A stretch of 63,726 bases of DNA, counting the filler, from Octopus bimaculoides (taxonomy: Eukaryota), in assembly GCF_001194135.2 (NCBI RefSeq). It is 4 parts of 4 records of this genome, joined end to end, with 100 filler letters (N's around TTAATTAATTAA, not from the genome) between each part and the next. Parts side by side here need not be neighbours in the genome. Positions count along the whole stretch, not along the records: positions 34,805 to 62,246 come from NC_068982.1; 3 more parts are not named here. One strand, written 5' to 3'. Shown in pieces: positions 36,235-61,101 of the stretch (its first letter is position 1; every line of letters begins with the position of its first letter). Made by a program: the position numbers and the translations under genes. The notes under the pieces are model-generated. The model saw only the letters and a list, made by a program, of their open reading frames with translations, did not search any database and had not been told where the DNA came from.

Positions 36235-36329
36235 ACCATTTCTATATCGGGAAGATCTTTAAAATATTTTGGAATTAGTGGCATGATTTCATCTTCACAA
36301 ATTTTCTTGACATATTCTAATAATTCTTC
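36235..36329 (-). CDS. DUF885 gene exon 9 (EELLEYVKKICEDEIMPLIPKYFKDLPDIEMV)
   Basis: Acceptor tttctcattgcag, donor GTAAGT, 95 nt, phase 0 to 2. Confidence 0.88.
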
Positions 36330-36614
36330 CTGCAATGAGAAAGAGCCTAGTCTTAGCATCAGAGGTAACACATCAAAGAACAAATGTTAAATAACTTATC
36401 AAATACTAATGATGATGATGATGATGATGATGATAACACTGAAAATGATAATAGAATAACAAGAAGAGAAAAGATGGTGGATATCACGTCCTAACAAAAT
36501 GCATATCTATAGGTAATATGGGTACCATCAGACAACATTCAAATACAACCAAACACAGCCCGCTTCCTTGCAAACTTCACTTACCAATAAGTTTGACTGC
36601 TATTACTATATTAG

Positions 36615-36664
36615 GAAAAGCAGCTGAAAAGCAGCTGAAAAGCAGCTGAAAAGCAGCTGAAAAG
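36615..36664. repeat. 11-bp perfect tandem repeat (gaaaagcagct) x4.5
   Basis: Read directly; creates four CAGCTG words. Confidence 0.95.
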
Positions 36665-36998
36665 AGCCTTGGGCTGGCTATATACATACGTGTTACATTA
36701 AAAATATAAATATTAACAGGTAACAAAAACATCAATTATAATGAAGTTGATATTGCTACTCTTTAGTCCAAAGTTAGTCCTGATAGAGTAGCCCAAATTC
36801 AATGGTATGACCATCCTGACATTTTTCAAGAATATAGTAGCCTGGACAATAACATCTACTATATCGATTAGTTTTTTTTTGTATGACAGTATGGATCATT
36901 TAAAGGAAATCTGGCTGCTGTTTTTAGCAAGCTGAAGGATTAGTTAAAGGCTCCATCAGCTCATCAATGAGTTGCATGAGTAGCAATGAGATTATACA

Positions 36999-37520
36999 AT
37001 GAGGGTTAGCTGAAAAGTTCATAGGCTGACCAAAATACTCTCATGGAATGTGACCAAATGAGGTTTATTTTCCAATATAGTCCTCCTTGCAGTCCACACA
37101 CTTCTTCCATTGCTATTGCATTGTTTTAATCCCATTAGTGAAGAAGCTTTCATTCTGTTGGTCAAAAAAGTTAACAGCAGATATGACATCATCACTACTG
37201 TGATACTCATTCCCAGCCAAAAGTTTTTTCATGTTGGGGAATGTATGATAATCAGACGGGGCCAAATCAGGAGAGTGGGGGAAGTGATCAACCCATTCAA
37301 AGCTAAGTCATGCAACCAATGTTGCAACACACAGCTCGTGTACTGCAACATTATCTTGATGAAAAAGACACCTTTCATTAGATTTCCTGGGTGTTTGGTC
37401 TTGACAGTCTTTCATAACTGTCTCAGTAAGTTGGCATAGTACTCTCCATTGATGGTGTGGCCTTTTGAAGATAGTCAATAAACACAATGTCTTTTGCATC
37501 CCCAAAAAACTGACCTCATC
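36999..37520 (-). mobile_element. mariner 3' fragment, same family as 48973-50183
   Basis: gagggttagctgaaaagttcataggctgacc TIR and adjacent sequence match the reverse complement of about 50000-50183; LFHQDNVAVH motif. Confidence 0.8.
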
Positions 37521-37585
37521 AACATTGCCATCAATCAGTTGTCATAGATTATTTGAAAAGAGAAAGAACTATAATTTTCAGCCAC

Positions 37586-37777
37586 CATCATCATCATGAT
37601 CATCATCGTTTAACGTCCGTTTTCCATGCTAGCATGGGTTGGACGATTTGATTGAGGACTGGTGAAACTGGATGGCAACACCAGGCTCCAATCTAATTTG
37701 GCAGAGTTTCTACAGCTGGATGCCCTTCCTAACGCCAACCACTCAGAGAGTGTAGTGGGTGCTTTTACGTGTCACCC
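37586..37777 (-). mobile_element. Family B element, young copy, in intron 8
   Basis: About 7 differences in about 180 bp versus 34900-35088. Confidence 0.88.
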
Positions 37778-38341
37778 ACCATAATTTGCTGAATTAAAAA
37801 AAAAAATTATCTACGGGAAGTAACTGAGATGGGCCACTGGTTTGAATTTACATGATTAAATTGTAACAGGTTTCTTCTCAGATTTGATCTTGCAACATTT
37901 CTATCTGAATTATTACCATGTTTGGTAATTTTTATCACAACTCACAATAAAACACTCATGCAATCATCCAGCATACCAGGTGATATACATTACAGCCAAT
38001 CACATTTGGCAGCAGACATCAAGGAACCCATTTTAGTTTACATGCATAAATACAAAAGAACATTTTAAAAGTTTACTGTGAGATTGTATTAAACCATGAT
38101 TTTAGCTCTCACTAGAGATCACCTTAGTCACAGTTGGAGGTCAGGTTCACTCATTTGCTAACCACTTTACAGTGTGTACTGGGTGCACTAGTACCAACAC
38201 TAGAGGGATTGTTTCTTTCATCAAACACTCTACATGATGTTTGTGGGAATGGTGGCTTTCTGCTATGGCCCCAACATATGAAGAGGATATGAAAGGGGTT
38301 ACTATGTATCTATATGTAATCAACAACAATGCCATGCCTAC

Positions 38342-38596
38342 CTTTGTTTGACAAAAGAATTCTTTCCTTGTCTTAAGTAATTTACTACATTCTTTCATGT
38401 CCAATGGAAGATTCTCAGCCTTGTAGATTTTCATAATTTCAGATTTGATACGTTCAACTTCTGACAGCCCAAGCTTGTGGATCTCTTCAGGACTTAGGTT
38501 GGATGATGTATGGAAACGGACACAAGCATCATAAAACTCCTTCCCATTTGGCAAATAACAGGCACCTGGTTCTTGACGGGAATGTTTCAGGTATAC
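38342..38596 (-). CDS. DUF885 gene exon 8 (VYLKHSRQEPGACYLPNGKEFY...EFFCQTK)
   Basis: Acceptor ttttcctcaag, donor GTAGGC, 255 nt, phase 0 to 0; strongest DUF885 signature; core of ORF 38147..38620. Confidence 0.92.
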
Positions 38597-39688
38597 CTTG
38601 AGGAAAACATAAACCAACAATTAAGAACCATCACAATTTTTTTTTTTTTTTATTACAAAATGAAATGGAAACACACTTGCAATACAACCACACCTACATA
38701 GACATGCAATAAAATTTTTATATATTTCACATTTATGACCCAACATAAACTCTCTCTCTCTCTCACACACAGAGAGTGAGAGCAAGGTAGGCAAGCAATA
38801 AAACTGGAGCAGGAAGGTATATAGAGTTAAAAGGCCCAGCTATGATACCTAGATTATAAGAAGTGCTATGTAAAACTAATTGAATGTTTGTGAGAGCTAA
38901 CCAATGAGAACCGAGAACCACAAACCAGCTTTGTAGATCGAAAAATGCCCTGGAACTAAAGAAATAGTAAGTGATACACTACAATGGTGAAACAGTACAA
39001 TAGAGCCGTAACATCTAGGTTTGTCAAGAGAGGGGTGGAGAGTGAAGAGAGTAAGGAACACTAGCAGGTAGCTAGAAGGAAAGCTATGTGTCAAATATTT
39101 TGAGCTTAAGAAGTTTTCCATTCTATGCTCTGTGAAGACCAGGAGTGCAACTGTGGTTTTCGAGACTACAAAGCAATCCATCAGAGTAAGTTAGGGTGTC
39201 GTTGGTAAAAAAGTAAATGTAGAATAATTGTGGAACACATGTCCAGATCAACACTGACAAGAAGTAGAGAAGCAATATTACAAGCAGTCACTGAAAGAGG
39301 GGAATGTGTAATAGGCAAAAGAGCGAAGTGCTCAAGTGGATCCAACAGGGAGACTGGCTACTTTGAGATTTACTGTTATATGGTAGAAAGGGTCATTAAG
39401 GATATGAAGGAAGAAAAAGAAGCAAGCCCATTAGAGATAGTTGTTCAGAATCTGAAAACATCAAGTAAAGTAGAACATATAAAGTGAGAATTTACGAAAA
39501 ACAAAAGACAAAGACAGATGTATAAACAACAAACAGATGTATTAGTTTAACGCTCGGGAAGTGAGAAAGTCTTTTACATTTCGAGCCTATGCTCTTCGAC
39601 AGAAAGGAACACAGAAATAAACAAGGAGAGAAAATAGAAAAAGGTTTAGTGGCTAGCGATCTATCATGGCAAATCCCCTAATCAAGTT

Positions 39689-39730
<42 letters not shown>

Positions 39731-40284
39731 CTTCTCCCTCTCTCTGTCACACACACACACACACACACACAAACCCTGTGCTTTTCTCTTTCTTCTGTTA
39801 AGACTCTTTATCTTCCCATTAATGCTTTAAGCTAACATCACATTGATTAAGCCTTGTCCCTTCTATGTCATTTTTTTTTTATTGTTCATTGCATTTATAA
39901 TTCATAAATATATAAACTTTTTAGTGGTTAGATTGGTATTATGCTGTTATAGAATTCATACCAGGAAATTTATAAATATGAGCATAGCATGTTCAATTTG
40001 TACCCAAATATAGGTCAGGGATAGGTCACAGTTGGTGATTAGTGTTGAAAACTTATCTTCAAGTAAATTTTCAATTGAGTTTGTAGAAGGGGTTGGGTTG
40101 ATATAAGTTTTGTTAAAGTAAAATATCTATTGGAGTGTGTGAGTATGTGTATGCATATGGTGCGTGTGTGTGTGTCTATGGGATAGATAAAGCAAATGCA
40201 CATTGATACATGCACAGCTAAATGAATGCATATATATGGCATACACTTCCCTAAAAATATGCATTTGTATATGCATATATATAC

Positions 40285-40600
40285 GGCACGTGAAAAGACA
40301 TTCGAGCGAGATCGTTGCCAGTGCCAATGGACTGGCTCCTGTGCAGGTGACATGTAAAATACACCATTTCGAGCGTGGTCATCGCCAGTACCCATGTGAC
40401 TGGCCCTCGTACCGGTGGCATGTAAAAGCACCCACTACACTCTCGGAGTGGTTGGCGTTAGGAAGGGCATCCAGCTGTAGAAACTCTGCCAAATCAAATT
40501 GGAGCCTGGTGTCACCTCCTGGTCCACCAGTCCTCAGACAAATCATCCAACCCATGCTAGCATGGAAAGCGGACGTTAAACGACGATGATGATGATGATG
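40285..40600 (+). mobile_element. Family B element in intron 7
   Basis: Internal ttgccagt units, core and (gat)n tail. Confidence 0.85.
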
Positions 40601-41387
40601 ATACATACAGACAGACAAGGATACATACATAAGCTTGCAAACATATATATATGCTTTCATACATACATATTTGTATACATGTATACATACATACACATAT
40701 ATTTACATACACATGAAAAAAAGATCAAAGGTTCTCCCTGAGCCATTGGTTCATATGACCAGTTTCCCAGATTCTGTAGCATATATTTCCACCAACTAGA
40801 CGGGATGCTGGTCCATCACAAGATTACTCATTTTTGCCAGCTGAGAGAACTGGAGTAACATGAAATGAACTGTTTTGCTCATGAACATAACACATCACTT
40901 GGTCCTGGAATCGAAGCTACCCAAACCCCCAACATATACTTGCCACGCATATACTTTTTCTTGTTGTTTTCTTACACAAACACTTCTTTCTCCCTACAAA
41001 GAGATTAGAACCATGCCTAATTTTCATATTCATAGTTTCACCTATCAAATGAACAACCCACCCCTCTTGTCATCAATAAACTATATAAAAGATCTGAAGG
41101 CCTAACCAAGCCATAATCTGACAATGACAAGTATGCCAAAACTTCAAAGTCACTTTCAACCTTTTCCTTGTAAAACAACATATGGTACTCTACTGAAAAA
41201 TATTAATGATCCTTTAATTTAATGTTCAACTGATTTTTTATATAGCTTTACATAAAAAACAAACATTAATATATACACATACACACAGCATGTAAAAGCA
41301 AATGTAACAAAATAAAATTTCCTCTTCATCTCCTCCTCTAATATACACATTATAATTCACTTCATTCACACCATTTCAAAGGTGTCT

Positions 41388-41427
<40 letters not shown>

Positions 41428-41634
41428 CATAAACACATGCACACAACTGAAATGTTAAAGTTGTTCAGTTTTGATATTTTTTCCTTAAAAAAAATATGCT
41501 AAAACTTAATAACCCAAACGTCAGAAATGTTTTGTTTTTTTTTCTCTTGATGATTATCACTCATAATAACATGACTCTTATTCAACACTAGACACAAGCT
41601 GTAAGAGAGTATCAGGAAACTGAAAATATAAGCA

Positions 41635-41705
41635 ATCCTATAGCATCAGGTGGCAGCTATCATGACTCTTCTGGTTATGATAGCTGCCACCTGATGCTAT
41701 AGGAT
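41635..41705. repeat. Hairpin 1: perfect 29-bp inverted repeat, 13-nt spacer
   Basis: atcctatagcatcaggtggcagctatcat (41635-41663) is the exact reverse complement of 41677-41705. Confidence 0.95.
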
Positions 41706-41709
41706 GTTG

Positions 41710-41849
41710 TGGGTAAAAACTGTAAATGAAAAATTAAGAATATTTCCATTGTTGAGTATGTTGATGTAGCTTGGCTCCTTGTAGCCAAGCTACATCAACA
41801 TACTCAACATTGGAAATATTTTTAATTTTTCATTTACAGTTTTTACCCA
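41710..41849. repeat. Hairpin 2: 67-bp inverted repeat (65/67), 6-nt loop
   Basis: 41710-41776 pairs with 41783-41849; loop ccttgt. Confidence 0.95.
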
Positions 41850-42234
41850 AGCATTTACAGCTGGTCAGACTAATCTTTGTAACAACTACCTCCCACTCTC
41901 ATTGTCATCTACTAAGTGCCTTCCACAGATAACACACACTCCAAATAAACTACTTAGAACCAACTTGAAGATGGCTATGCTTCCAATAGATATAAACAGA
42001 AACAAAATGCTTGTGGATAGAAATGTCACCCACTTCTTGATACTCTTAAAGTAACCTTATTTCAATTAAATAAATACAGTTTAAGGAGTGTTAAATTTTC
42101 AATTTAAAAAGGAGGAATGAAAAAATAACTATGCAGCAAACATATCCTTTTATGAAGTGCAAGTTTTCAAAAGCTGATATTCATATCCTGATTACTAAAC
42201 AGAAAAGAAGCAAACCTATTTTTGAGTATTCATT

Positions 42235-42483
42235 GATTCTTTTACTTGTTTCAGTCATCTGACTGGGGCCATGTTGGAGCACTGCCTTTTAGTCAAAGAA
42301 ATTGACCCCTGGACTTATTCTTTGTAAGCCTGGTATTTATTCTATTGGTCTTTTCTGTCAAACTGCTAAGTTACGGGGACATAAACACACCAACATTGGT
42401 TGTCAAGTGATGGGGGGGGGGAGACAAACAGACACACATAAATACACACACACACACATACACACACACACACATACACACAC
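42235..42483 (-). mobile_element. Family A SINE 3' half
   Basis: ttcttttacttgtttcagtca...gggacataaacacaccaacat. Confidence 0.8.
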
Positions 42484-42959
42484 NNNNNNNNNNTTCACAC
42501 TTACTGTAATGGTTCTTCAATTTTTCTTAGCCCTGTCAAAGGACTCAGAAGGTCGGGCGCCCAACCAGGTCTTTTGCAATACTCTTAAAGGCAGGAACTT
42601 TACAGCACCCCCTCTTACATTGATAGATTTTGATACATATCTACTTGGCCCTTTTCACTCTTTTATAGATACTCTGGTTATGTAATGGCTTTTAAAATTT
42701 TGTCCAATATATTAACATCTACTATTTTGACTACCATAAAATAAAAATGTAAACTGTGTAATGAATACTCGAATCCATTATCACATGCATGTGTACACAT
42801 ACACACACATGTATATATGTGCATACACAATATGCTCATGCATCTATACGCACATATGCATATACAACATATTTCAAAGTTTATCATAATAAAAAATAAT
42901 ATTCGCATTTTCATGTAACAAAACTATCACAAGAAAAATATAATTTTTAAATAATTCAC

Positions 42960-43047
42960 ATTTTCAAAAAATTCTTTTAACTTTTGCAACGCTGGCTTCA
43001 ATTGATTCTGGAGAATTTCAGATAGCTGTGTTTTAGTTTCTTCCACC
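42960..43047 (-). CDS. DUF885 gene exon 7 (VEETKTQLSEILQNQLKPALQKLKEFFEN)
   Basis: Acceptor ttactttctag, donor GTGAAT, 88 nt, phase 2 to 0; lies within ORF 42927..43118. Confidence 0.88.
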
Positions 43048-43099
43048 CTAGAAAGTAAAATAGAGTAACACAAAGTATACATATGCACATATATATTAT

Positions 43100-43300
43100 T
43101 GGTTTCAAGTTTTGGCACAAGGCCAGAAATTTCAGGGGAGGGGGTAAGCTGATTATATTCATTTCAGTGCTCAACAGGTACTTATTTTATGATGAAAGGC
43201 AAAGCTGACCTCAGCAGAATTTGAACACAGAACATAAAGACAGATGAAATGCCACCAAGTATTTTACCTGGTTTGCTAACAATTCTGCCAGCTTGCCTTA
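43100..43300 (-). mobile_element. Family C SINE, 53 bp upstream of the exon 7 acceptor
   Basis: gatgaaaggcaaagctgacctcagcagaatttgaac..aattctgccagcttgcc. Confidence 0.75.
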
Positions 43301-44610: not shown

Positions 44611-44644
44611 TATAAATATATATAAATGAACATAAATTCAAAAA

Positions 44645-44795
44645 CATCTATGTGGTTAAGATGCTTGCTTGGCAATCATGTGGTTTCAGATTCAGCCCCA
44701 CTACACAGGACCTTGAGCAAGTGTCTTCTTTTATAGCCTTAAGCCAGTCAATGCTTTCAAAGTGACTTTGGTAGACAGAAACTGTGTGAAAGCAG

Positions 44796-44831
<36 letters not shown>

Positions 44832-45022
44832 ATTTGTCAGCCGTCACCACTTGGCAACTGGTGTTGGTTTATTTACATTCCCATATCTTGGCAGTTTGAC
44901 AAAAGAGACCATTAGAATAAGTAGCCAGACTTAAAATATAAGCACTTGTTCAATTAAGTCTTTTGAGGTGGTGCCCCAGCATGGCCACAGTTCAATGACT
45001 GAAACAAGTAAAAGATAAAAGA
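44645..45022 (+). mobile_element. Family A SINE, older copy
   Basis: ccttgagcaagtgtcttct core, TG repeat, gaaacaagtaaaagataaaaga tail. Confidence 0.75.
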
Positions 45023-45117
45023 TATATATAAAACAATGGATAATTCTCATATCATGGTGAAGTGTCTAGAAACTAGTAGAGTATCTGACTGAAGAAATAT
45101 TCAGTTGTAAAATATAT

Positions 45118-45651: not shown

Positions 45652-45761
45652 ATTCCTAACAGTTTCTCATTAGTTGGTGTCTTTTTAAATGGGTTTAAAA
45701 ACACTGAAGTTCCACTGTCTATTTTCTTTATTAAGTCTTCTAATTGTTGAGGAACTTCTCT
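45652..45761 (-). CDS. DUF885 gene exon 6 (REVPQQLEDLIKKIDSGTSVFLNPFKKTPTNEKLLGM)
   Basis: Acceptor ttttcaag, donor GTAAGT, 110 nt, phase 0 to 2. Confidence 0.85.
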
Positions 45762-46609: not shown

Positions 46610-46678
46610 CACTGACTCAATAGGACAAATCATCTTCTTCTCAATTCCCTCCAGTAAAATAGTTTCTATATCACCCAA
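46610..46678 (-). CDS. DUF885 gene exon 5 (LGDIETILLEGIEKKMICPIESV)
   Basis: Acceptor tttgtttcag, donor GTATGT, 69 nt, phase 0 to 0. Confidence 0.85.
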
Positions 46679-48600
46679 CTGAAACAAAATTATTATAGAA
46701 TTTAATATAGAAGCAACTAGAAGCAATCAGCTTTAGAACTTTTCCTAGATATTCAGCTTCAAATCTTCTAAAATCTTTTAAGAACATTATTGTATTATTT
46801 AGCATCTAGTTAGTGGTTTCAGAAGTAATAGCATTAGACAACATACTTTAAACAATCTAAATTTGGAGTTCAAATCTTGCTCGAGTAAAGTTTACTCTTG
46901 ATCCTATGAAGGTTACAAAATAAATAGTAATTCTACTGAATTCTACTGAAAGATAAGTTTACAATAGAAGTGGTACCAAACTCTAACATTAGGTAAAAAT
47001 GAAAGAAATATGTAGCATTATGTGTTAGGCATTTTTACAAAGTTTCAACAAATTGGCAATAAAAAGCCATTTTAATTTTATCTGTCAAACAACTTTTTTT
47101 TTTATTCCAAGGATTTAGATTTGCATTTCCTCCACTGGGTTAATTAAAACAAGAAGAATATGCCCATCTAAATCTTTAATAGACACTGCTGTTCAAAATA
47201 AGATCAGAAATTTCTACAGAAAATGCTACCATAGATGTGTAGAAATGGATATTTACATAAATCAATGCAGTGTTCTCAGTTTGAATCAGCCATAAAGCTA
47301 AACTGATAAAGACAAGGAAATAAAGTCAGCTGTAACAGAGTATGCTAAGGCATTCCATCCGTGACCAACTTGTCCTTCATTCAGACAATATCATCCAACA
47401 TGTCCCTACTTTATAAGACAGTAGGCTGTAATTTGAAGGAGATTAGCTGTTATTTCTAGCAGGTCAAGGGACCACATAGAAGGTACTTCACAGGCTTGAG
47501 GGATTAACATATATTACACAGAGTAATTTTAATATCCCTCATGAGCTTTGATTTTAATAAATCCAGTACATTGAACAAAAGACCTGAACCTAATCATTCA
47601 ACCTGCTAGAAACAGCAACTGTATATCTCCCTCATATCACACCCTACCACCCTAGAAAAGGAAGATACTTTGGAAATATGATCCTAGATACATTACACAT
47701 GGGGAAAACAAACAAGACAGTCATGTTTGGAATGTTACAGATCACTGCTGTTTGATCAGAGATGACTTGGTGCCAATAAGAATAACAACAAATCAAGTAG
47801 AACCCCAACACCATTACACATCTACTATTGAAACTGCACAAAAGACTATAACTTATCTGAACAGCAGATATGAAATTCAAAATTAAAATTATGTTAGTAA
47901 ACGCTCAACAGTTACTAACTCTACTGTTTATATAGAGCAGATTTTTTCAGTTTTCACAGAAAGTCAGATATTAAGCACAACACAACAGAATGTTAACACC
48001 AATTTTATAAAATATTTTGAAAACTGGTTATTTAATGGAAAGTTGTCAAAATTATTTTGACCCCTTCTTTGTATAAGTGCTCGATCTGTTGAGCATTAGC
48101 ATTCAATCTTGCTAATAAAGTATATCTCTGATAACTTGCCATATGGTAACACAGCTATGATTAGTTCTATACATGGACTTGTTATTGAATGTTTGCTTTG
48201 ATATTTCTCAAAGTCATTGACTCCATGCTCAAATTAACATCCAAGATGTGCTTATGTCATCATTATCAACATTTCTTTATCAATAAAAAAAATAGATAAC
48301 AAACTTGAAATTTACAGTGGTTTACTTGATCCTTATTGCTAGATATATGTCAGATTTATTATTTTTTTGTTTTTTACTTCTAATATGTATAGGCCAAATC
48401 AGCAGAATTCATCCAATTCTATCTTTTATCATCAAATATACACTTTTCAATTTTCTGTTATCTATTGTATATTACATTGCAATCTCTCTAGGCCTAGTAT
48501 TATCTAGATTATTAAACCAAGATAATTATTGCAAGCCATGAACTTGCAATAATTGCTCATACACACTGCATTCATCTATTATGAGGTTAGTTTAACTTAC

Positions 48601-48730
48601 CTGCTTTACAAAACTCTTCATACAGGCAACATATTTCTGGTAGTCAGCTTCTTCCTTAAACTGCATCCAGTCAACACGGAACATAAAATTTATGTGTGGA
48701 TTTTCTAGGAAACTGACAGGAAAGTAGTAG
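48601..48730 (-). CDS. DUF885 gene exon 4 (YYFPVSFLENPHINFMFRVDWMQFKEEADYQKYVACMKSFVKQ)
   Basis: Acceptor tctcctag, donor GTAAGT, 130 nt, phase 2 to 0. Confidence 0.9.
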
Positions 48731-48972: not shown

Positions 48973-50183
48973 TATGAGGGTGGGCTGAAAAGTTCATTGG
49001 TTGCTATGAAGGAGTGGCTCTAGAGCTGTGAAATTTTGCATGCATTAATTTCAACCTTCCTTATTAATAACTGTATTGCTTCTTTTGAAGTAAACTGATA
49101 TACGACAGTTCAAAGACGACTTCAAAAGTAACTCATAGCAACTTCTCTTGAAAACTGATAAAATTTGGCAAATTTGGCACAAAAAAGGGTTTAGTCCCCA
49201 AGGACATTCATGCTGACACAGTTGATACAGCACAGGATGATAATCCAGCTTTATCAACAGTGCAAAAGTAGGCTGGTGAATTTAAGAGGGGAAGGGAGAA
49301 TCTTGGTGATGACCCAAGGTGTGGATGTCCTGCAACTGCCACTACTGAGGAAAACATTGATGTGTTCATCACATGGTGATGGATGACAGGCGACTGACTA
49401 TAAATCAAATGGTGAATGCTATTAGCATATCCCATGAGAGGGGTGAGAATATTTTGCAAAATGAATATGGCATAAAGAATGTTTCTGCTGGTGTGTTTTT
49501 GAACACACCAGGCTGATCACAACACAAGAAAACCTGACATTGTTCAAGGATGAGTGTTGGCCTCATCACTTTGCTACAAAGAAGGCCAAGGCCGTTTCAT
49601 CTGCAGAGAAGGTAACAGCCTCAGGTTTTGGGGATTCAAAAGGCATCATATTTATTGACTAGAGAAGGTAACAGCCTCAGGTTTTTGGGATTCAAAAGGC
49701 ATCATATTTATTGACTATCTTCAAAAGAGCTACACTATTAATGGAGAGTACTATACCAACTTGCTGAGGCAGTTATGATAGGCTATGAAGACTAAACACA
49801 CAGGAAAACTGATGAAAGCAGTCATTTTCATCAGGACAATGCTCCAGTATACAAGTCCTTACTTTCAGTAGCTGCTGTGCATGAGTGCAGTTTTGAACTG
49901 GTTGATCACCCTCCCTATTCTCCTGATTTGGCCCCATCTGACTATCATCTGTTGCCCGACATGAGAAATCTTTTGGCTGGGAAGCAGTATTGCAGTGATG
50001 ACTGTTGATGACTTTTTTGACCAACAAGATGAAAGCTTCTTCATTAATGGGATCCCAGCACTGCAAACTCAATAGAAGAAATGGGTGAACTGCAAGGGGA
50101 CTATGTTGAAAAATAAGCCTCATTTGGTCACATTCCATGAGAGTATTTTGGTCAGCCTGTGAACTTTTCAGCTGATCCCTATA
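48973..50183 (+). mobile_element. mariner transposon, decayed, with 56-bp internal tandem duplication (49605-49716)
   Basis: TIRs tatgagggtgggctgaaaagttca / tgaacttttcagctgatccctata; FHQDNAPVY, HPPYSPDLAPSDYHL. Confidence 0.88.
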
Positions 50184-50429
50184 AATAAAAGGCTTGTATT
50201 TTAAATGAATCTCATTAACAAACATTGTTGCTCTTGTTCATAGAGATCATTGACATATCTCACATCCAATGTTTCCTTGATATTCCAATGAAAAACAAAA
50301 ACTCTGATTTTACTCGATAAAACCTTATAATCAAGATCTAGATAGAACTAATAGATGTTACTACTAGGTACAAGATACCAGAATATCCAAAGACACAGTT
50401 TTTGGCAATGAAAGAATAACAAGAGAATA

Positions 50430-50582
50430 CTGTGTAATAAGAAATTTGCATCCAAATCACGTGGTTTCAGGTTCAGTCCCACTGTGTAGCACCTTGAGCA
50501 AGTGTCTTCTACAACAGCCCCAGGCAAGCCAAAGCTTTGTGAGTGGATTTGATAAACAGAAACTGAAAGAAGCCTGTCGTAT
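50430..50582 (+). mobile_element. Family A SINE 5' part
   Basis: ggttcagtcccactg..ccttgagcaagtgtcttct..gaaactgaaagaagcctgtcg. Confidence 0.7.
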
Positions 50583-50589
50583 ATAATCA

Positions 50590-51359: not shown

Positions 51360-51852
51360 CTATCATAGTAGTAGTTGAGTTAAAGTTGCTGATAGGCGAT
51401 GACTACGGACCGAGACCTTTGGAAATGTGCTGTGCGTGAGAAGACCCGGCAAGCCAAGTAAGATCGTTGCCAGTGCCCCTGGACTGGTTCTTGTGCGGGT
51501 GGCACATGAGATGCACCATTTTGAGCGTGGCCGTTGCCAGTACCGCCTGACTGGCTCCTGTAGGATTTTCGAGCGAGATTGTTGCCAGTGCCCCTGGACT
51601 GGCTTGTGCGGGTGGCACATAAAAGACACCATTTCGAGCGTGGCCGTTTTCGTGCGGGTGACACGTAAAAGCACCCACTACACTCTCTGAGTGGTTGGCG
51701 TTAGGAAGGGCATCCAGCTGTAGAAACTCTGCCAAATCAGACTGGAGCCTGGTGTTGCCATCCGGTTTCACCAGTCCTCAGTCAAATCGTCCAACCCATG
51801 CTAGCATGGAAAGCGGACGTTAAACGATGATGATGATGATGATGATGATGAT
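51360..51852 (+). mobile_element. Family B element, longest copy, with modular internal repeats
   Basis: 5' leader, three gttgccagt-initiated units (67, 48 and 65 bp), core and (gat)n tail. Confidence 0.88.
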
Positions 51853-51968
51853 GTGAGACAGAGAAGAGAGATATGCACATCAGGTGATTCAGAGCAGCAG
51901 TGTTTATCAGAGAGAGAAGGAGACAGACAGAGATTGAAAAGCTAATAAAGAAATAAAGTGTAACTTAC

Positions 51969-52099
51969 CCCATGAAGTCTAAACCTTTAAGAGTGCTCTC
52001 AAGATCTTCTTTTAGTAAACGAAGATTTATTTTGGAGTCATGATCAAGATCTGACATGTCTATAGCAGAAGCTTCTTTCAAAAATCCTTCTATAATTGG
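51969..52099 (-). CDS. DUF885 gene exon 3 (PIIEGFLKEASAIDMSDLDHDSKINLRLLKEDLESTLKGLDFMG)
   Basis: Acceptor ttacag, donor GTAAGT, 131 nt, phase 0 to 2. Confidence 0.9.
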
Positions 52100-52999: not shown

Positions 53000-53228
53000 G
53001 GCGGCGAGCAGGCAGAATCATTAGCACGCCGGGCGAAATGCTTAGCAGTATTTCGTCTGCCGTTACGTTCTGAGTTCAAATTCCGCCGAGGTCGACTTTG
53101 CCTTTCATCCTTTCGGGGTCGATTAAATAAGTACCAGTTACGCACTGGGGGTCGATGTAATCGACTTAATCCCTTTGTCTGTCCTTGTTTGTCCCCTGTT
53201 TAGCCCCCTGTGGGCAGTAAAGAAATAA
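53000..53228 (+). mobile_element. Family C tRNA-SINE, young copy with TSD
   Basis: Head ggcggcgagcaggcagaatcattagc, B-box gagttcaaattcc, core gcctttcatcctttcggggtcgat; flanking direct repeat gaatgagtagg (52991-53001 and 53229-53239). Confidence 0.9.
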
Positions 53229-54144: not shown

Positions 54145-54292
54145 CTTTTGCTTTATATAAGCTTCAACACGTAAGTCATCTACTCTATCATTATATTCCA
54201 TTTTCCCACAAAAAGCAGCAAAATCAGGGCTGTCTTCAAGACGCCACTGCCAAAACCTTTCAAATAAGTCTTCAAGTTTTCCACCTTTACCC
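54145..54292 (-). CDS. DUF885 gene exon 2 (GKGGKLEDLFERFWQWRLEDSPDFAAFCGKMEYNDRVDDLRVEAYIKQK)
   Basis: Acceptor tttttcag, donor GTACTG, 148 nt; carries the N-terminal FWxWRLxxSPxFA motif. Confidence 0.9.
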
Positions 54293-54347
54293 CTGAAAAA
54301 TATAAAGTGATTATTGATAACAGCAAAATGCCAACCAATCGCAGCCT

Positions 54348-54433
54348 TACATTGTGAAAAAATAAAAATAAAGGTGAATATTACATTTCACTGTTGTGGT
54401 GTTGCTGTAAGGTGTTATACATTAGAAAGAAGT
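54348..54433 (+). repeat. 86-bp direct repeat, copy 1
   Basis: tacattgtgaaaaaataaaaataaaggtgaatattac...agaaagaagt, repeated at 56471-56556 with about 3 differences. Confidence 0.9.
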
Positions 54434-55545
54434 CACGTGAGACAGTCTTTTCTAAACTTCTGGTGAGCCAGCTGCATCGTATAAAGCACTAGCTTCACAC
54501 CGTCTCAAGGTCTTTCGGTTCCAGACCTTTTGAGGTCTAGCCACTGACCACAGAGCACACAGCCAGTTCCGTTGAGACATAACAGCAGCTACATGGAGAC
54601 TCATCAACACTTGACTAACAGCATACGGCAATCTCTTTCTTTGTCGCCTCCATCTTCTCAACGTCAACATCATCTCTCAACGTACACACCAATCAGCAAC
54701 GCTCGCACAGGTTCTATCTCCACACTGTTTGTGAATTAATTCATCATGGTTAACAGCAAATACAACCTGCGACAACCTTCTGTAACAAGAGACTGGCTCT
54801 GCATCGTAGCCACAACTTCTTATACAACAGTACCTCAACCGGCTCTGCATTGCAGCCATAACTTCTTGGTACAGCATTTCAACTATCATATACCTTGACT
54901 ACGAACTGGTATTTATCATCCTTGTGTCTGAACATTCTTCTTACGTCATATTATAGACTCTTTCAATGCTCTGTACTTATCACACATGCATACACCCATG
55001 TTTGTACACGCACGCTTTGTATACATGACAACCTGTCTATTATTATGTTTATATGACGCACACACAGACACACATGTTAACCTATAGATAAAATCTTCTC
55101 TTAAACATTCTACCCCGGTTGTGTCTCTCTTTTCCTTCTGGCACTTATACTCATTTATTTCTTTTTCATATTTTATTTGTATCGACCATGCCATGTACTA
55201 AAGGAGCCATTCTCATCACTTCTCCTTTCGCACGGTCGTTTACAAATCTCTCTCTAGCTTGTATCAAGTGCTTGCAGCTGACTAAAAAGAAGAGGAAACA
55301 TGAAACAAAAATTTTTATCATATTTCATAAAAAATACAACAGCTTTTTTCTAACCAAATATATTAAATATATGTTTTGATAAGTATTTCTACATAAGTTA
55401 ATTTGTTGTTCTTGAGAACACTTATGTGAATGTTGCTAACACTCATTATGTGTAATATCAAGGCTAATAATATTATTATCAAGATGCATGATTAGGATAT
55501 GAAATAATGTAATAAAATACAGGTTTAATATATGTGTGGGTGTGT

Positions 55546-55548
<3 letters not shown>

Positions 55549-55604
<56 letters not shown>
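55549..55604. repeat. (GA)n microsatellite
   Basis: Read directly. Confidence 0.95.
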
Positions 55605-55608
<4 letters not shown>

Positions 55609-55924
55609 AGATAATGTCTTCATACTGAGACAATTGCAAAAAGTTGCTAGCCAAGTGTAAGCTTCTCTACTTAGCATTTGTTGATTTCGAGCAGAGTACT
55701 ACAATCTATTGTCTGAGAGTTACTAAGGAAATCGTGATTTGAATGGTTGGGGAAAGCAGCACAATCTATGTAAAGAGATCTCCAACTAAATTTAGGTAAC
55801 TATGCAGCTCTACTACAAGAACCTGCACTTCCCACAACTTTTCTGTCAAACTGTGTCCTCTCAATCTCTAAAATAAAGCTGACAACCCATTTCCTCGAAG
55901 TGTATACTCTTGGAAGCTACATGG

Positions 55925-56115
55925 CAACCTCAGTAGTACTGGTGCCATGAAAAAATAAACCCAGTACACTCTGTAATTAGTTGGCATTAGGATGAGCATC
56001 CAGCCATAGAAACTATGCCAAAGCAGACACTGGAGCCTGATGCAGTCCTTGGACTCATTGAATCCTGTCAACCCATCCAACCTATGCCAGAGTAGAACAT
56101 GGATGTTAAATGATG
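55925..56115 (+). mobile_element. Family B-like element, old copy
   Basis: gttggcattaggatgagcatccagcc..gaaactatgccaaa..ccaacctatgcc..ggatgttaaatgatg. Confidence 0.65.
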
Positions 56116-56139
56116 TTGATAGTAATACTGATGATGCAA

Positions 56140-57600
56140 TCAGCAAAGTAAGATTTGGCAATAAATTCAATGAGGAATTTAGAGTGCAAGTAGGTGTCCA
56201 TCAGGACTTGCTTCTCAGCCCCCTCCTAGCCATAACAATGGAGTTGAAGAATGGTTGCACATGGGAACTCCTATATGCCGATACTAAATTCTTACAGCAG
56301 AGACTGTGGAAGATTTAGAGAAAAGTTCCAGGCATGGAATCAAAACCTAGTAAAACCTAATGTAAACTTAGCAACTACTAAAGAAGACATTTGGACATTT
56401 GTACCCTGCTGTGAGAAGAATAATTTCCAATCCATTGTGATTAATACCTTAGAGGTGTGCGTGTGTTCAATACATTGTGAAAAAATAAAAATAAAGGTGA
56501 ATATTACATTTCACAGTTGTGGAGTAGCTGTAAGGTGTTATACATTAGAAAGAAGTACTTCATTTTATGTTGTGTCTGAAGTTAAAGGCTCAGTAAGTAC
56601 CTTTGGACTAGTTCTATAGGTGCCAGAATTTTAACAAAATCTGTGGAAATGGTGGCATGCTGTACATAAATTATATATATGGTATGTATATGATGTTAGG
56701 GTTGTTTACAGAAAGGGTTATTGCAAAACTGATTAGGAACAGAATTAGCCTGAATGAGAAGCAGTTCAGCTTGGCCCCAGGAAAAGGTACTGATGCCATA
56801 TTCTTTGTGAGATAATTGCATGTACATGGCTAGGAGTAAACCCCTATACCTAGCAATTTGAAAAAAGCCTTTGACAGAGGACCTCACATTGTAATTGGGT
56901 AGGTGTTAAGGAAACTAGGAATAGATGAATGACTTGTACAAGTTATGTACAAGAGAGCAATCAACAAGGTGATAATCAGCAATAAGTTCAGAAGAGAATT
57001 TAGCATGCATGTAAAGATATATCATGTCTCAGTTCTCTTTATTACAGTCTTTCATGTCATAACAAAAGAATATGAAACCAGCTCTTCTTGGGAACTTCTG
57101 TATGCTGCTAACTTAGCTCTTATAGCAGAATCTGTAGCAGATATGCCAGACACAGAATTGAAGGGTCTTAAAGTAACTTAGCTAAAACAAAAATTTTAGT
57201 AGTGTGGGAACACAAAATCCTTATAGGAATAAGGAAATGATTGTGTTCTGCTTTCAGAAAAGGAATTGGTAGAAATTCTATGAGGTGTACCTAGTGTAAA
57301 CAATGGGCACACAAGAGGCTAAAACAGTAGGATAATGTACCCTCAACATGCTGCCTACTGCTTATTTCCTACTCTCACACCTTTCCACTACCTCCTTTCC
57401 CCTCTGCTCCACTGTACCTATTCTATATCCTTTCATCTCTCCACCATCTTCTATTATACCAGGCCACCTGTAACTGAGCCGAAAGCATTCAACCTGTACA
57501 AGAGAGCAGTCAGTAAGGTGATAATCAGCAATAAGTTCAGCAGAGACCCTCACATTGTAATTAGGTGGGTGCTAAGGAAACTAGCATCAGCTCTTCTCCT
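56140..57600 (+). mobile_element. Several overlapping RTE RT fragments
   Basis: EEFRVQVGVHQDLLLSPLL..WELLYAD; QFSLAPGKGTDAIFFVR..KKAFDR..VLRKLG; the gtacaagagagca...aataagttcag segment occurs twice (about 56945 and 57495). Confidence 0.75.
56471..56556 (+). repeat. 86-bp direct repeat, copy 2
   Basis: Matches 54348-54433. Confidence 0.9.
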
Positions 57601-57804
57601 GCATACCTTACTATACCACCCAACTTATGGATTCTGAATCCCCCTACTTCCACCGCTTACATACTGTGATCGCACCTTCTTCTTTCCATCTAAATTATGA
57701 TGCTTGAAAAGAAATAAGTGGAACTGCATTCTTGCAACCTTCACTCACTGTCCTTAAGTCTTCTGTCACCATGCTCTCTTCACCTTATTGGTCATGTTAC
57801 TTTG

Positions 57805-57940
57805 AGAATGTGTCCAGTCTCTTTTGCTGAATCGCTAAGTTACAGGGACATAAACACACCAACATCAGTTTTCAAGTGATGGTGGGGGCACAAACACAGA
57901 CGCACACATAAATATATATATATACATATACATATCTCAT

Positions 57941-57993
<53 letters not shown>

Positions 57994-58135
57994 TGAAAGT
58001 CTCTTTCAGTTTCCATCTACCAAATTTACTAACAAGGCTTTGGCCAGCCCAAAGACACTTACTCAAGGTACCACACACTAGGATTGAACCCGGAACCATG
58101 CAGTTGAGAAGCAAGCTTCTTACCACACAGCCATC
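57805..58135 (-). mobile_element. Family A SINE, older copy
   Basis: ctttcagtttccatctaccaaat...gaacccggaaccatg...accacacagcca. Confidence 0.75.
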
Positions 58136-58626
58136 ATTACATGGTAATTAAATTTCCCACAAATCACATCATACCATTTAATGCCAAATTGTGACATGCA
58201 AGCCCAAATAATGTTGTTTGAAGATCTTGGTTTAAAAATAAAAAGACAAAATGATCATGTTTTGAATGCAGGATGGTTACAGTTAAAACGCTTTTCAAGA
58301 ATAGGATGGTCACAGCTGAAATGCCTTTAAAAGACAGGATTTTCATAGAATATCTTTAAAGAAAGACGAATGTTTCCAATCTGCATTGATGAATTGGACA
58401 CATTATTTTCCACTGCAAAAAATTTTTCGTTTTAGACTATGGGATACTCAAAAAAAGCATTTGTAAAACATCTATAAATGCTTTGTCAAAAAATATATAT
58501 ATTACCAAAGGACATTTTTATTTCTTTGCATTGGGGCATTTCATTCAAGGGCATTTTTGCCCAGGCTCCATGGTTGTTACAGTAGATTAGGTTTTATGAG
58601 TGGAATTCTAGGTTAAGAACCCTATA

Positions 58627-59149
58627 GAACCCCTCATAACTTATTTTTTGGGGAATTTTCAGAAAAATTTTGCCAATTTATGGAAATTCATAATTCAAAA
58701 TTTATTTTAATTTTTGCGAATTTATGGAAATTCGTAATTCAAAATTTACTTCTATAATTTTTTACCTCACCCCGCCCAATCCTAAAAGTTTTGATCGTTT
58801 TCGAATTTGTTTTTAAAATCCAAGTTGAAAATACAAACAGTCCGAATTTTTCATTTAAATCCCAGCAAAGAACGCATCATCATTCTTTTAAATGTGTTTG
58901 TGGGGAGAAAAGTATTGAAGGACATCAATACATGTCAGAATGCCAAAGAAATGAGGAAACTATCAGGTGGTTGTGAAATGTGCTAAAAACAACAGCTAAA
59001 TCACCTAAACACACATGAAAAAAAAACTTGTTTTTTTCTATTTTATTTTGCATGATCGTATGAATTCCCGTGTGTAGAACACAAATTCGCAAAAGTTTTC
59101 TGAAAATTCTAAAAAGTTAAGAAAAAGCTGAGGGGTTATGTGGGGTGCT
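58627..59149. mobile_element. Possible old MITE with imperfect terminal inverted repeats
   Basis: gaacccctcataac..gaattttcagaaaaattttgccaattt versus the reverse complement of 59080-59149; no TSD confirmed. Confidence 0.4.
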
Positions 59150-59207
59150 TGAACCAAAATTCCGCCCATAAATTTTTAGGATTTAAGGGGAGGGGGTAAA
59201 AATATTT

Positions 59208-59379
59208 GGTAAATTTTCAGATCAACACCCGCACGATTTTCACTAGGGTGTTAGGGTTAAGGTTTTAGGGTTAGGGTTTTAGGGTTGTAGAGTTAAGGTT
59301 AGGGTTAGGGTGTTAGTTTTAGGGTTAGGGTTTTAGGGTTAGGGTTTTTAGCGTGTGGGTGTTAATCTGAAAATTTACC
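59208..59379. mobile_element. Merlin-like MITE with one-directional TTAGGG array
   Basis: GGTAA...TTACC ends, 28-bp TIR with 2 mismatches, exact 8-bp TSD aaatattt. Confidence 0.8.
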
Positions 59380-59827
59380 AAATATTTAAAAATTTGAATT
59401 TTGAATTCCAGTATGTAGAAAACAAATTCGTAATCATTTTCTAGTGTTGAAAAATTATTACAGCTGCAGTTCTGTTCAGGACAAAAACATGATCTGAATT
59501 CTGCATTACTTGGTGTAAACGTTTGGGGTACTGTGACATTTCTCTCCATTTATTATGCTAATAATTGAAAAGACCTGACATATCATATTTTCTTCTTTTA
59601 ATGTTAAAAAAATCTGACGTTGTGTGTGCAGTTAAAGAACACAATTGGGTTAATGTTTACTCTATTACCCAATCACGAAAAACAAAATAAAAACTAGTGC
59701 AACGGGTGTGGAAAAAAATGTGTATGAAACGAATATGAAAACAAAAAGGTGCATAAACCAACAGGGGTTGGAGAGAGGACTTTCGGAAAATTCACAAGAT
59801 CCGAGTTTTTCCCGCATAGCTTTTAGG

Positions 59828-59859
<32 letters not shown>

Positions 59860-61090
59860 NNNNNNNNNNNNNNNNNNNNNNNNNNNNNNNNNNNNNNNNN
59901 NNNNNNNNNNNNNNNNNNNNNNNNNNNNNNNNNNNNNNNNNNNNNNNNNNNNNNNNNNNNNNNNNNNNNNNNNNNNNNNNNNNNNNNNNNNNNNNNNNNN
60001 NNNNNNNNNNNNNNNNNNNNNNNNNNNNNNNNNNNNNNNNNNNNNNNNNNNNNNNNNNNNNNNNNNNNNNNNNNNNNNNNNNNNNNNNNNNNNNNNTTTT
60101 AATGAAATTTTATATAAATACCTTTCAAACGGCATACCTTTCTATTCACACTCAAAATATTGAGCATTTATGGGGAAGCTTTGAAAAGTGCATTGTTCGA
60201 CCCGGAATGAGTGAGACCTAGCTACTTGAAACAATGCCGCTCGTTTAGTTTTCATACAAGCCATCTGACCGCCAACCTAGCGACTTCATAAGTTTCTTTT
60301 GGGGGCTGCAAGACTATACCCGTGTCCCTGATGACACAGAAGAATGAATACCGGTTTTTGTTGTCGTTCACCAATAACTCTCGTTGGCGCATTTTTTATA
60401 CTGCAAAACATTCGATGGGGGGAAAAAATCCAACCTTCTGAATTTTCTGAAAGTTAACCGGTTAATAAAGTAAACATGAACCAAACAATTGCGTCAAACG
60501 AATAAGAATCTAGTAAGAGGTAACCAAACATTCAGTTTTTAGTTTACTTGCGTCAGGTTTTGCTTTCATTATTTATTTAAATAGTGGTGCCTTTCTAAAC
60601 AATTCCTGATAACGTGGAAATTTTCGGGAATAAATTACCACGAAGATGATTTATTACTTCGTCCTGGAGTCGATTTCAATTTATATCCCTATAAATATAT
60701 ATGCACCGTAGTTTCTGCAAGCGTATTTGCTATTTTGCATTCAATACCAATATCGTGTTGAAAAAAAAAGTATTATATATACATTCAGTCATTCATGCAA
60801 ATATAATTATTTTATAGCATCTATTTTAATTTATTTTTAAACAGCTAATTGTGGATCCATTTAAAAAAAACTGAGAACACTGTCGGTCGAAATTCCATTT
60901 ATGGAAAACATCACTCGAAGAAAATGATAAACACGACATAAATGAAAAATGAAAGTTAATTGAACGTACAATGAAAGTACAAATCTTTAAATTAAAACAA
61001 TCAGTTTGGTATTTCATTTGGCTAAGACAAATAATTAATAGATATATATAAAAAACAAATTAAAACAAGAATAAATGAAATACTACTCAC

Positions 61091-61101
61091 ATCTTGGACA
61101 T
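61091..61101 (-). CDS. DUF885 gene exon 1, coding part (ATG TCC AAG AT)
   Basis: Followed by perfect donor GTGAGT (61090-61085). The phase-2 end fits the single leading G of exon 2. An in-frame TAG lies upstream of the ATG. Only 11 nt, so linkage is inferred. Confidence 0.6.

What the first reader, a model, noticed from the sequence alone, without database searches (positions are those of the whole stretch)
36235..61101. Intron-rich animal gene for a mainly bacterial, uncharacterised DUF885 protein
Seen: nine exons splice to an open 345-aa frame, though only two of them appear in the ORF track. No signal peptide is apparent at the N-terminus. Established (recalled): DUF885 is known mostly from bacteria, often as secreted or lipoproteins, with a conserved HExxPGHH zincin-like motif and no settled function. 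Inference: a cytosolic metallopeptidase-like protein, either anciently transferred and fully intronised or ancestral and patchily retained; function in cephalopods is undescribed as far as I know.
Basis: partly seen in the sequence, partly recalled or inferred. Interest (0 to 1): 0.7.

Follow-up and report, generated by a model that had tools for sequence, protein, structure and literature searches.

The report
Octopus DUF885 gene, first nine exons
This is the front 59% of an already annotated Octopus bimaculoides gene for a conserved, uncharacterised zinc-peptidase-like (DUF885) protein, and its intron layout shows animals have inherited it vertically since before corals and bilaterians split, so it is real but ordinary.

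Summary
On the minus strand, nine GT-AG exons (61101 to 36235) splice into an open frame of 345 codons plus 2 nt. The product matches Pfam DUF885 (E 8e-47). It is 345/345 identical to Octopus bimaculoides XP_014768738.1 (LOC106868120, UniProt "DUF885 domain-containing protein", 581 aa), so the gene is already annotated.

The piece holds only the N-terminal helical lobe. The HExxPGHH motif and the other 236 residues lie beyond the piece's edge. Both assembly gaps sit in introns (1 and 7) and do not touch the frame.

dN/dS is 0.17 against O. sinensis and 0.16 against Argonauta. There is no N-terminal hydrophobic segment.

Seven of the eight introns in the piece, plus the ninth donor, share position and phase with Aplysia, amphioxus, horseshoe crab and the coral Porites. 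Animal sequences form one clade (94.5% bootstrap). Any bacterial origin therefore predates the cnidarian-bilaterian ancestor, and a recent transfer is excluded.

No biochemical function is known. The orthologue's predicted fold matches only unannotated DUF885 crystal structures, with a weak link to M3 oligopeptidases. The most likely role is a cytosolic zinc oligo- or carboxypeptidase, and that is inferred, not shown. Interest is low.

The parts
61091..61101 (-). Coding exon 1 (ATGTCCAAGAT, 11 nt, MSK plus 2 nt), donor gtgagt. This is the first exon of isoform X2.
   Evidence: The same 11 nt and donor are present in O. sinensis. The N-terminus MSKMGK matches XP_014768738.1.
60122..60135 (-). 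Alternative first coding exon 1b (ATGCCGTTTGAAAG, MPFE plus 2 nt), donor gtattt. It gives isoform X1 (MPFERGKGG...) and lies 25 nt before the 59860-60096 gap.
   Evidence: Sequence read. Joined to exon 2, it reproduces the N-terminus of P0284, O. bimaculoides isoform X1.
54145..54292 (-). Exon 2 (148 nt).
   Evidence: 138/148 nt identical to O. sinensis.
51969..52099 (-). Exon 3 (131 nt).
   Evidence: The same 131-nt exon occurs in Aplysia, Branchiostoma and Limulus, and is split 60+71 in Porites.
48601..48730 (-). Exon 4 (130 nt).
46610..46678 (-). Exon 5 (69 nt, LGDIETILLEGIEKKMICPIESV).
   Evidence: A 69-nt exon occurs at this place in all six other genes mapped, from Argonauta to the coral.
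45652..45761 (-). Exon 6 (110 nt).
42960..43047 (-). Exon 7 (88 nt).
38342..38596 (-). Exon 8 (255 nt). It carries the invariant Y231, Y251 and G272 and the HxxGLxEVxRI stretch. It equals the 168+87 nt exons of amphioxus and Limulus, so one intron was lost in molluscs.
36235..36329 (-). Exon 9 (95 nt). It ends in phase 2 with donor gtaagt, and the rest of the gene is off the piece.
   Evidence: In O. sinensis exon 10 lies 2.57 kb further on, and only 1.43 kb remain here.
42484..42493 (.). Assembly gap inside intron 7, next to a CA/TG microsatellite.
59860..60096 (.). Assembly gap inside intron 1, just downstream of alternative exon 1b.

Best explanation
The piece carries the 5' part of Octopus bimaculoides gene LOC106868120: nine coding exons plus one alternative first exon. 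They encode residues 1-345 of a 581-residue DUF885-family protein.

Shown:
- The gene is a normal, vertically inherited animal gene under purifying selection.
- Its exon-intron structure was already in place in the common ancestor of cnidarians and bilaterians.

Inferred:
- The protein stays in the cytosol, because it has no leader peptide.
- It is a two-lobed enzyme. The helical N-terminal lobe encoded here closes over a C-terminal zincin-like lobe encoded off the piece. That lobe has a small beta-sheet, then a helix ending in H396-E397, then a P-G turn and H402-H403, with E442/E449 downstream.
- A zinc ion held by these residues would activate water to cut short peptides. The most likely activity is oligopeptidase or carboxypeptidase, as in the M3/M32 families.

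I put identity and evolutionary history at about 0.95. I put the zinc-peptidase mechanism at about 0.5.
For: Identity:
- 345/345 residues identical to XP_014768738.1.
- 95.1% identical to O. sinensis LOC115232424 and 72.5% to the Argonauta hians orthologue.
- Pfam DUF885 at E 8e-47 for the piece and 2e-141 for the full orthologue.

Selection:
- dN/dS is 0.169 against O. sinensis and 0.16 against Argonauta. It is 0.13 over the full length between those two species.
- All nine splice sites are identical in O. sinensis.

Age:
- Exon sizes 131/130/69/~110/~85/(168+87)/95/117/61/111/65/72/103/67/~110 recur in Aplysia, Branchiostoma, Limulus and Porites.
- 15 of the 16 octopus introns are shared in position and phase with Aplysia, Branchiostoma and Porites, one of them offset by a single alignment column next to an indel. 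Limulus shares 14; its annotated protein ends before the last one.
- In a neighbour-joining tree Metazoa are monophyletic at 94.5% bootstrap, Mollusca at 100% and cephalopods at 100%.

Expression elsewhere:
- Intronless 1.9-2.5 kb Logan contigs encode full-length orthologues in other cephalopods, on many contigs. Their cluster includes a cuttlefish protein.

Fold and chemistry:
- The AlphaFold model of the O. sinensis orthologue has pLDDT 94.6.
- Foldseek gives TM 0.90 to 3o0y, 0.76-0.80 to 3iuk and 0.70-0.74 to 3u24. The next match is oligoendopeptidase F 2h1j, at probability 0.91 and E 0.04.
- H396, E397, P400, G401, H402, H403 and E449 are invariant across 64 animal and bacterial sequences.
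- Pfam places DUF885 in the Peptidase_MA clan (PMC12572635).
- FFAS saw an M32-carboxypeptidase-like fold for a spider DUF885 protein (PMC7682650).
- InterPro's DUF885 entry (IPR010281) is listed among annotations enriched at zinc sites in solved structures (PMC4539273).

Cytosolic:
- There is no N-terminal hydrophobic stretch in the mollusc or amphioxus forms.
Against: - No DUF885 protein has a demonstrated activity in the library searched.
- The motif is HExxPGHH, not the canonical HExxH. The two halves sit on different helices in the model.
- The only link to a characterised peptidase is weak: 2h1j at TM 0.30. Profile searches of the PDB and of Pfam found nothing beyond DUF885.
- The catalytic half is not in this piece, so nothing about it is read from this sequence.
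- No transcript data for O. bimaculoides itself were available.
- Octopods replace two near-invariant residues in the N-terminal lobe: G107 to N and R133 to C.
- The tree is a quick distance tree on 34 sequences. Its bacterial sample was drawn by similarity to an animal-biased profile.
Confidence: 0.85

Rival explanations
1. Recent horizontal transfer from bacteria into cephalopods or molluscs, followed by intron gain.
For: Pfam describes the family as bacterial, and most hits are bacterial or from metagenomes. Octopus-to-bacteria identity (33-37%) is only slightly below octopus-to-other-phyla identity (38-45%). A Dictyostelium DUF885 gene has been listed as a transfer candidate (PMC3188802).
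Against: 15 of 16 octopus introns are shared in position and phase with a gastropod, a chordate and a coral, and 14 with a chelicerate. Animals form one clade at 94.5% bootstrap, with internal branching close to the species tree. The locus is collinear between two octopus species inside chromosome-scale scaffolds.
Confidence: 0.01
2. The protein has the zincin-like fold but is not a peptidase. It could act on another amide or ester substrate, or work as a binding or scaffold protein.
For: No activity is known for any member. The motif is atypical and split over two helices. The fold link to true peptidases is weak. A bacterial DUF885 paper (OMP76) came up in a host-protein-binding context (title only).
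Against: Invariance of H396, E397, H402, H403 and E449 from bacteria to animals points to conserved catalysis rather than binding alone. Clan placement and M32-like threading also point to peptidases.
Confidence: 0.3
3. The copy in this genome is decaying or is a mis-assembled pseudogene. The open 345-codon frame would then be a remnant, and the gaps would hide damage.
For: There are two assembly gaps within the gene span, and the C-terminal 41% is not visible in the piece. In O. vulgaris the annotated gene is split into two partial proteins.
Against: All nine exons are open with intact splice sites. dN/dS is 0.17. Both gaps lie in introns with collinear flanks. RefSeq holds a complete 581-aa product for this species with every invariant residue.
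Confidence: 0.03

Closest known systems
Octopus bimaculoides LOC106868120 (XP_014768738.1 isoform X2; UniProt A0A0L8HWW8, 'DUF885 domain-containing protein')
   Same: Identical over all 345 residues encoded in the piece. Isoform X1's alternative first exon is also present in the piece.
   Different: Nothing differs. The piece simply lacks exons 10-17 (residues 346-581).
Octopus sinensis LOC115232424 (XP_029658148.1) and the Argonauta hians orthologue
   Same: Same 17-exon structure. Identity is 95.1% and 72.5% over the 345 residues. The O. sinensis locus is collinear, introns included.
   Different: The species differ. The first coding exon is 2 nt in the Argonauta annotation, against 11 nt here.
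Bacterial DUF885 crystal structures 3O0Y (Colwellia 'lipoprotein'), 3IUK (Arthrobacter) and 3U24 (Shewanella)
   Same: Same Pfam family and fold. The orthologue model superposes on 3o0y at TM 0.90, and the profile E-value is 2.5e-138.
   Different: Sequence identity is only 15-26%. Two of the bacterial proteins are labelled lipoproteins, which implies export, whereas the octopus protein has no leader. None has an assigned function.
M3 / M32 zinc peptidases (oligoendopeptidase F 2H1J; Taq-type carboxypeptidases)
   Same: Same Pfam clan, Peptidase_MA (PMC12572635). Both are large, mostly helical two-lobed proteins. There is a weak Foldseek match to 2h1j (probability 0.91) and a published FFAS link to M32.
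   Different: The motif is HExxPGHH rather than HExxH. TM to 2h1j is only 0.30. There is no sequence-level match, and no activity has been shown.
Secreted or membrane-anchored animal DUF885 proteins (Limulus, Priapulus, Lineus, Trinorchestia; the abundant pholcid-spider venom protein)
   Same: Same family. For Limulus, the same intron positions.
   Different: Those carry an N-terminal hydrophobic leader or anchor. The octopus, gastropod and amphioxus forms do not.

Membership tests
Pfam PF05960 (DUF885) | Profile match above the curated gathering score | tested here: met
   161.4 bits against a cut-off of 32.4, E 8.2e-47. Residues 26-344 cover profile positions 1-314 of 532.
Pfam PF05960 (DUF885) | Conserved HExxPGHH motif and the C-terminal half of the domain | not testable with these tools
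   These lie beyond the piece's edge. The same-species RefSeq protein, identical over the 345 residues, has LHEGIPGHH, and so do the orthologues. H396, E397, P400, G401, H402 and H403 are invariant in 64 sequences.
Pfam PF05960 (DUF885) | Fold shared with the solved DUF885 structures | tested here: met
   Tested on the 95%-identical O. sinensis orthologue, not on the piece. pLDDT is 94.6. TM is 0.90 to 3o0y, 0.76-0.80 to 3iuk and 0.70-0.74 to 3u24.
Peptidase_MA clan (zincin/gluzincin metallopeptidases) | HExxH on one helix plus a downstream Glu as zinc ligands | tested here: inconclusive
   The motif is H-E-x-x-P-G-H-H. HE sits at the end of helix 387-397 and HH at the start of helix 402-410. 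E449 is invariant and E442 nearly so.
Peptidase_MA clan (zincin/gluzincin metallopeptidases) | Structural similarity to a characterised member | tested here: inconclusive
   The only match is 2h1j (oligoendopeptidase F), at E 0.038, probability 0.91 and TM 0.30. There are no sequence or profile hits. Clan placement and M32 threading come from the literature.
Peptidase_MA clan (zincin/gluzincin metallopeptidases) | Metal-dependent peptide-bond hydrolysis | not testable with these tools
   This needs biochemistry. No report for any DUF885 protein was found.
Recent bacterium-to-animal horizontally transferred genes | Animal sequences nested within a bacterial subclade, narrow host distribution, and introns absent or lineage-specific | tested here: not met
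   Metazoa are monophyletic at 94.5%. Homologues are named in Mollusca, Chordata, Arthropoda, Priapulida, Nemertea and Cnidaria. Of the introns in the piece, 7 of 8 plus the ninth donor are shared across phyla.

The most novel reading that the evidence does not exclude
DUF885 would be an unrecognised, ancient eumetazoan family of zinc peptidases with an atypical split HE...HH site, existing in a cytosolic form (molluscs, amphioxus) and a secreted or anchored form (ecdysozoans, nemerteans, spider venom). No vertebrate or insect name appeared among the named hits I saw, but those lists were truncated and absence was not tested. Characterising the octopus enzyme would then define a new peptidase family and its physiological substrate.
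Probability: 0.4. Interest if true: 0.4.

Novelty: already known. Interest (0 to 1): 0.2.

Why it matters
As a genome feature it adds little, because the gene, its exon structure and its DUF885 label are already in RefSeq and UniProt.

What this check adds is a clear answer to the transfer question. The gene's intron layout is shared from corals to octopus, amphioxus and horseshoe crab. It is therefore an old animal gene and not a cephalopod acquisition.

The open point is biochemical. A widely conserved, strongly constrained protein with an invariant metal-site-like motif has no known activity in any organism.

Tried and rejected
1. A false exon 5. My first model used a 24-nt 'exon' at 48085-48062 (IEHLYKEG, weak gtcaaa donor), picked from a marginal HMM hit (E 12). 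It gave 330 aa. The O. sinensis protein showed the true exon 5 at 46678-46610. The 48.1-kb stretch carries a stop and a 34-nt indel against O. sinensis and evolves like intron, so the resemblance is chance.

2. A failed protein search. Searching with the 80-aa exon 8 peptide alone found nothing, because the index needs shared words. The full spliced query worked.

3. Fungal introns. I mapped the chytrid Globomyces gene to ask whether introns are shared beyond animals. The annotated introns are 27-29 nt, and one junction has no GT-AG solution, so the mapping was uninformative and I dropped it.

4. Links to characterised peptidases. A Pfam scan of the catalytic half at E up to 10, NCBIfam, and a PDB profile search at E up to 10 gave nothing beyond DUF885.

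5. Other content of the piece. There are no tRNA genes and no Rfam families. Ten intronic ORFs that looked like transposase or reverse-transcriptase remnants gave no Pfam hit at E 0.01 or better.

6. Contamination and pseudogene readings were rejected; see the rival explanations.


Full report
**What is in the piece.**
The usable piece runs from 34805 to 62246. It is 36% G+C and has two internal N runs, 42484-42493 and 59860-60096. The DUF885 signal is on the minus strand. The largest open stretch, 38147-38620, matches Pfam PF05960 at profile positions 195-283.

I had no reference protein at first. I joined the obvious open segments and searched the representative library, which returned 2827 relatives at E below 1e-3, the best at about 38% identity. 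A profile built from those relatives picked out minus-strand segments in the order of the protein.

My first splice model held one wrong micro-exon and gave 330 codons. The O. sinensis protein found with the spliced query showed the true exon 5 at 46678-46610.

The final model has nine exons, all GT-AG, totalling 1037 nt. That is 345 codons plus 2 nt with no stop, running from 61101 to 36235.

**Identity.**
The 345-residue product hits DUF885 at E 8.2e-47, covering profile positions 1-314 of 532. Its matches to annotated cephalopod proteins are:
- 345/345 to Octopus bimaculoides XP_014768738.1 (LOC106868120 isoform X2, 581 aa; UniProt A0A0L8HWW8, "DUF885 domain-containing protein");
- 95.1% to O. 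sinensis LOC115232424;
- 72.5% to the Argonauta hians orthologue.

The window is therefore O. bimaculoides, and the gene is already annotated with this structure.

Isoform X1 begins MPFER. Its 14-nt alternative first exon is also in the piece, at 60135-60122 with donor gtattt, 25 nt before the larger gap.

**What is missing.**
The piece ends 1430 nt beyond exon 9. In O. sinensis exon 10 lies 2.57 kb beyond exon 9, and the gene has 17 coding exons. Residues 346-581 are therefore off the piece, and they include the LHEGIPGHH motif at 394-402.

**The gaps.**
Gap 42484-42493 lies in intron 7 and gap 59860-60096 lies in intron 1, so frame continuity is not at issue. Aligning the whole piece to the O. 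sinensis locus shows one collinear series of matches. Introns are 87-95% identical and exons 96.0% (996/1037).

The flanks of each gap land in order in the same intron. O. sinensis has about 1.5 kb and 3.3 kb more between them, partly made of interspersed repeats. The true gap sizes are therefore unknown. No coding exon is hidden, because the protein is continuous across both gaps.

**Is the gene alive?**
All nine splice sites are identical in O. sinensis. The dN/dS values are:

| Comparison | Codons | dN/dS | dS |
|---|---|---|---|
| Window vs O. sinensis | 345 | 0.169 | 0.125 |
| Window vs Argonauta | 342 | 0.16 | 1.0 |
| O. sinensis vs Argonauta, full length | 578 | 0.13 | 1.07 |

No transcript assembly for O. 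bimaculoides itself was on record. Orthologues at 47-58% identity are encoded without introns on many 1.9-2.5 kb Logan contigs. One such cluster includes a cuttlefish (Acanthosepion pharaonis) protein. That is the expected signature of spliced mRNA in other cephalopods.

**Age and origin.**
Named homologues come from:
- gastropods: Haliotis, Aplysia, Physella, Elysia, Nucella, Batillaria, Bradybaena;
- amphioxus;
- horseshoe crabs, an amphipod and an ostracod;
- Priapulus and the nemertean Lineus;
- Porites corals;
- chytrid fungi, a Heimdallarchaeon and many bacteria.

I mapped the annotated proteins exactly onto their genomic loci. The exon sizes are nearly the same in every animal:

| Species | Coding exon sizes (nt) |
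|---|---|
| Octopus (O. sinensis) | 11, 148, 131, 130, 69, 110, 88, 255, 95, 117, 61, 111, 65, 72, 103, 67, 110 |
| Aplysia | 153, 131, 130, 69, 107, 85, 252, 95, 117, 61, 111, 65, 72, 103, 67, 110 |
| Branchiostoma | 153, 131, 130, 69, 107, 85, 168, 87, 95, 117, 61, 111, 65, 72, 103, 67, 113 |
| Limulus | same pattern from the 131-nt exon to the 103-nt exon, with small length differences; different first and last exons |
| Porites | 144, 60+71, 133, 69, 110, 85, 72+96, 87, 95, 120, 61, 111, 65, 72, 103, 67, 113 |

In alignment columns, 15 of the 16 octopus introns coincide in position and phase with Aplysia, Branchiostoma and Porites. One of them is offset by a single column beside an indel. 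Limulus shares 14, because its annotated protein ends before the last intron. Only intron 1 is octopod-specific. Molluscs have lost one intron inside exon 8. Within the piece, 7 of the 8 introns plus the ninth donor are shared.

A neighbour-joining tree of 34 domain sequences gives these bootstrap values:
- Metazoa 94.5%;
- Mollusca 100%;
- cephalopods 100%;
- arthropods plus Priapulus 60%.

Together these results rule out a recent transfer. They place the gene, already intron-rich, before the cnidarian-bilaterian ancestor. Whether eukaryotes first obtained it from bacteria is not resolved. Animals plus chytrids group at only 56.5%, and the chytrid intron mapping was uninformative.

**How it probably works.**
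The protein has no N-terminal hydrophobic segment. The highest 12-residue hydropathy in residues 1-45 is 0.18. The gastropod and amphioxus forms also lack one. The Limulus, Priapulus, Lineus and Trinorchestia homologues score 2.8-3.1. A cytosolic location is therefore the simplest reading. This is inferred.

The AlphaFold model of the O. sinensis orthologue is confident, with pLDDT 94.6 and pTM 0.93. Its layout is:
- residues 1-336, the part encoded here, form an all-helical lobe;
- residues 345-377 form a three-stranded sheet;
- helix 387-397 ends in H396-E397;
- P400-G401 form a turn;
- H402-H403 open the next helix.

H396, E397, P400, G401, H402, H403 and E449 are invariant in 64 animal and bacterial sequences. 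So are several Arg, Lys and Tyr residues.

Foldseek matches only the three structural-genomics DUF885 entries strongly (TM 0.90, 0.76-0.80 and 0.70-0.74). The next match is oligoendopeptidase F (M3) at probability 0.91 but TM 0.30. Three papers give further context:
- Pfam places DUF885 in the Peptidase_MA clan (PMC12572635).
- A spider-venom study reported an abundant DUF885 protein with an M32-carboxypeptidase-like fold by threading (PMC7682650).
- A survey of zinc sites in solved structures lists InterPro's DUF885 entry (IPR010281) among its enriched annotations (PMC4539273).

I therefore favour a zinc-dependent oligopeptidase or carboxypeptidase in which the N-terminal lobe gates access to the active site. 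I put that at about 0.5. No activity has been shown for any family member, and the motif is not the canonical HExxH.

**Verdict.**
However, the gene is already annotated. The piece holds only the non-catalytic half. The family is broadly and vertically inherited in animals. It is a sound but ordinary finding.

Noticed in passing
window 34805-35089, 37583-37777, 40285-40609, 51566-51851: An interspersed repeat of about 280 nt, SINE-like in size, occurs in both orientations inside introns. Three copies are 96-97% alike. At least nine further copies lie in the O. sinensis locus L001. No tRNA-like or Rfam match was found in the piece.
   Followed up: partly
window 35787-36185, 44626-45038, 50429-50585: A second interspersed repeat family, up to about 400 nt and adjoining CA/TG microsatellites. 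It also has several copies in L001.
   Followed up: partly
window 37116-37307 (-), 49877-50008 (+); inverted arms 37335-37466 / 49724-49855: Short open frames contain '...SPDLAPSDYH...'. From memory this resembles the C-terminal part of mariner/Tc1 transposases, so they are probably decayed transposon copies in introns 8 and 3. Pfam gave no hit at E 0.01 or better.
   Followed up: partly
window 56040-57181 (+): Plus-strand open frames in intron 1 look like reverse-transcriptase remnants by eye, for example '...GVHQDLLLSPLL...'. Pfam gave no hit at E 0.01 or better.
   Followed up: partly
window 48062-48085 (-): An intronic stretch translates to QQIEHLYKEGVKIILTTFH, which resembles the exon-5 peptide of homologues and misled my first gene model. 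It ends in a stop, lacks a usable donor, and carries a 34-nt indel against O. sinensis. It is chance resemblance or a long-dead relic.
   Followed up: yes
window exon 4 (48601-48730), residues 107 and 133: Octopods carry N at position 107 and C at position 133. At least 90% of 64 homologues have G and R there, and a Logan cephalopod-like orthologue (P0153) keeps R at the second position. The significance is unknown.
   Followed up: no
related proteins P0163-P0166 and chytrid proteins P0007, P0018, P0021: Some homologues carry two or three DUF885 domains in tandem on one polypeptide, 1090-1690 aa long. This is seen in metagenomic proteins and in chytrid fungi.
   Followed up: no
O. vulgaris proteins P0286 and P0287 (CAI9717121.1, CAI9717120.1): In the O. 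vulgaris annotation the orthologue is split into two partial proteins of 298 and 202 aa. This is probably an annotation or assembly break rather than biology.
   Followed up: no
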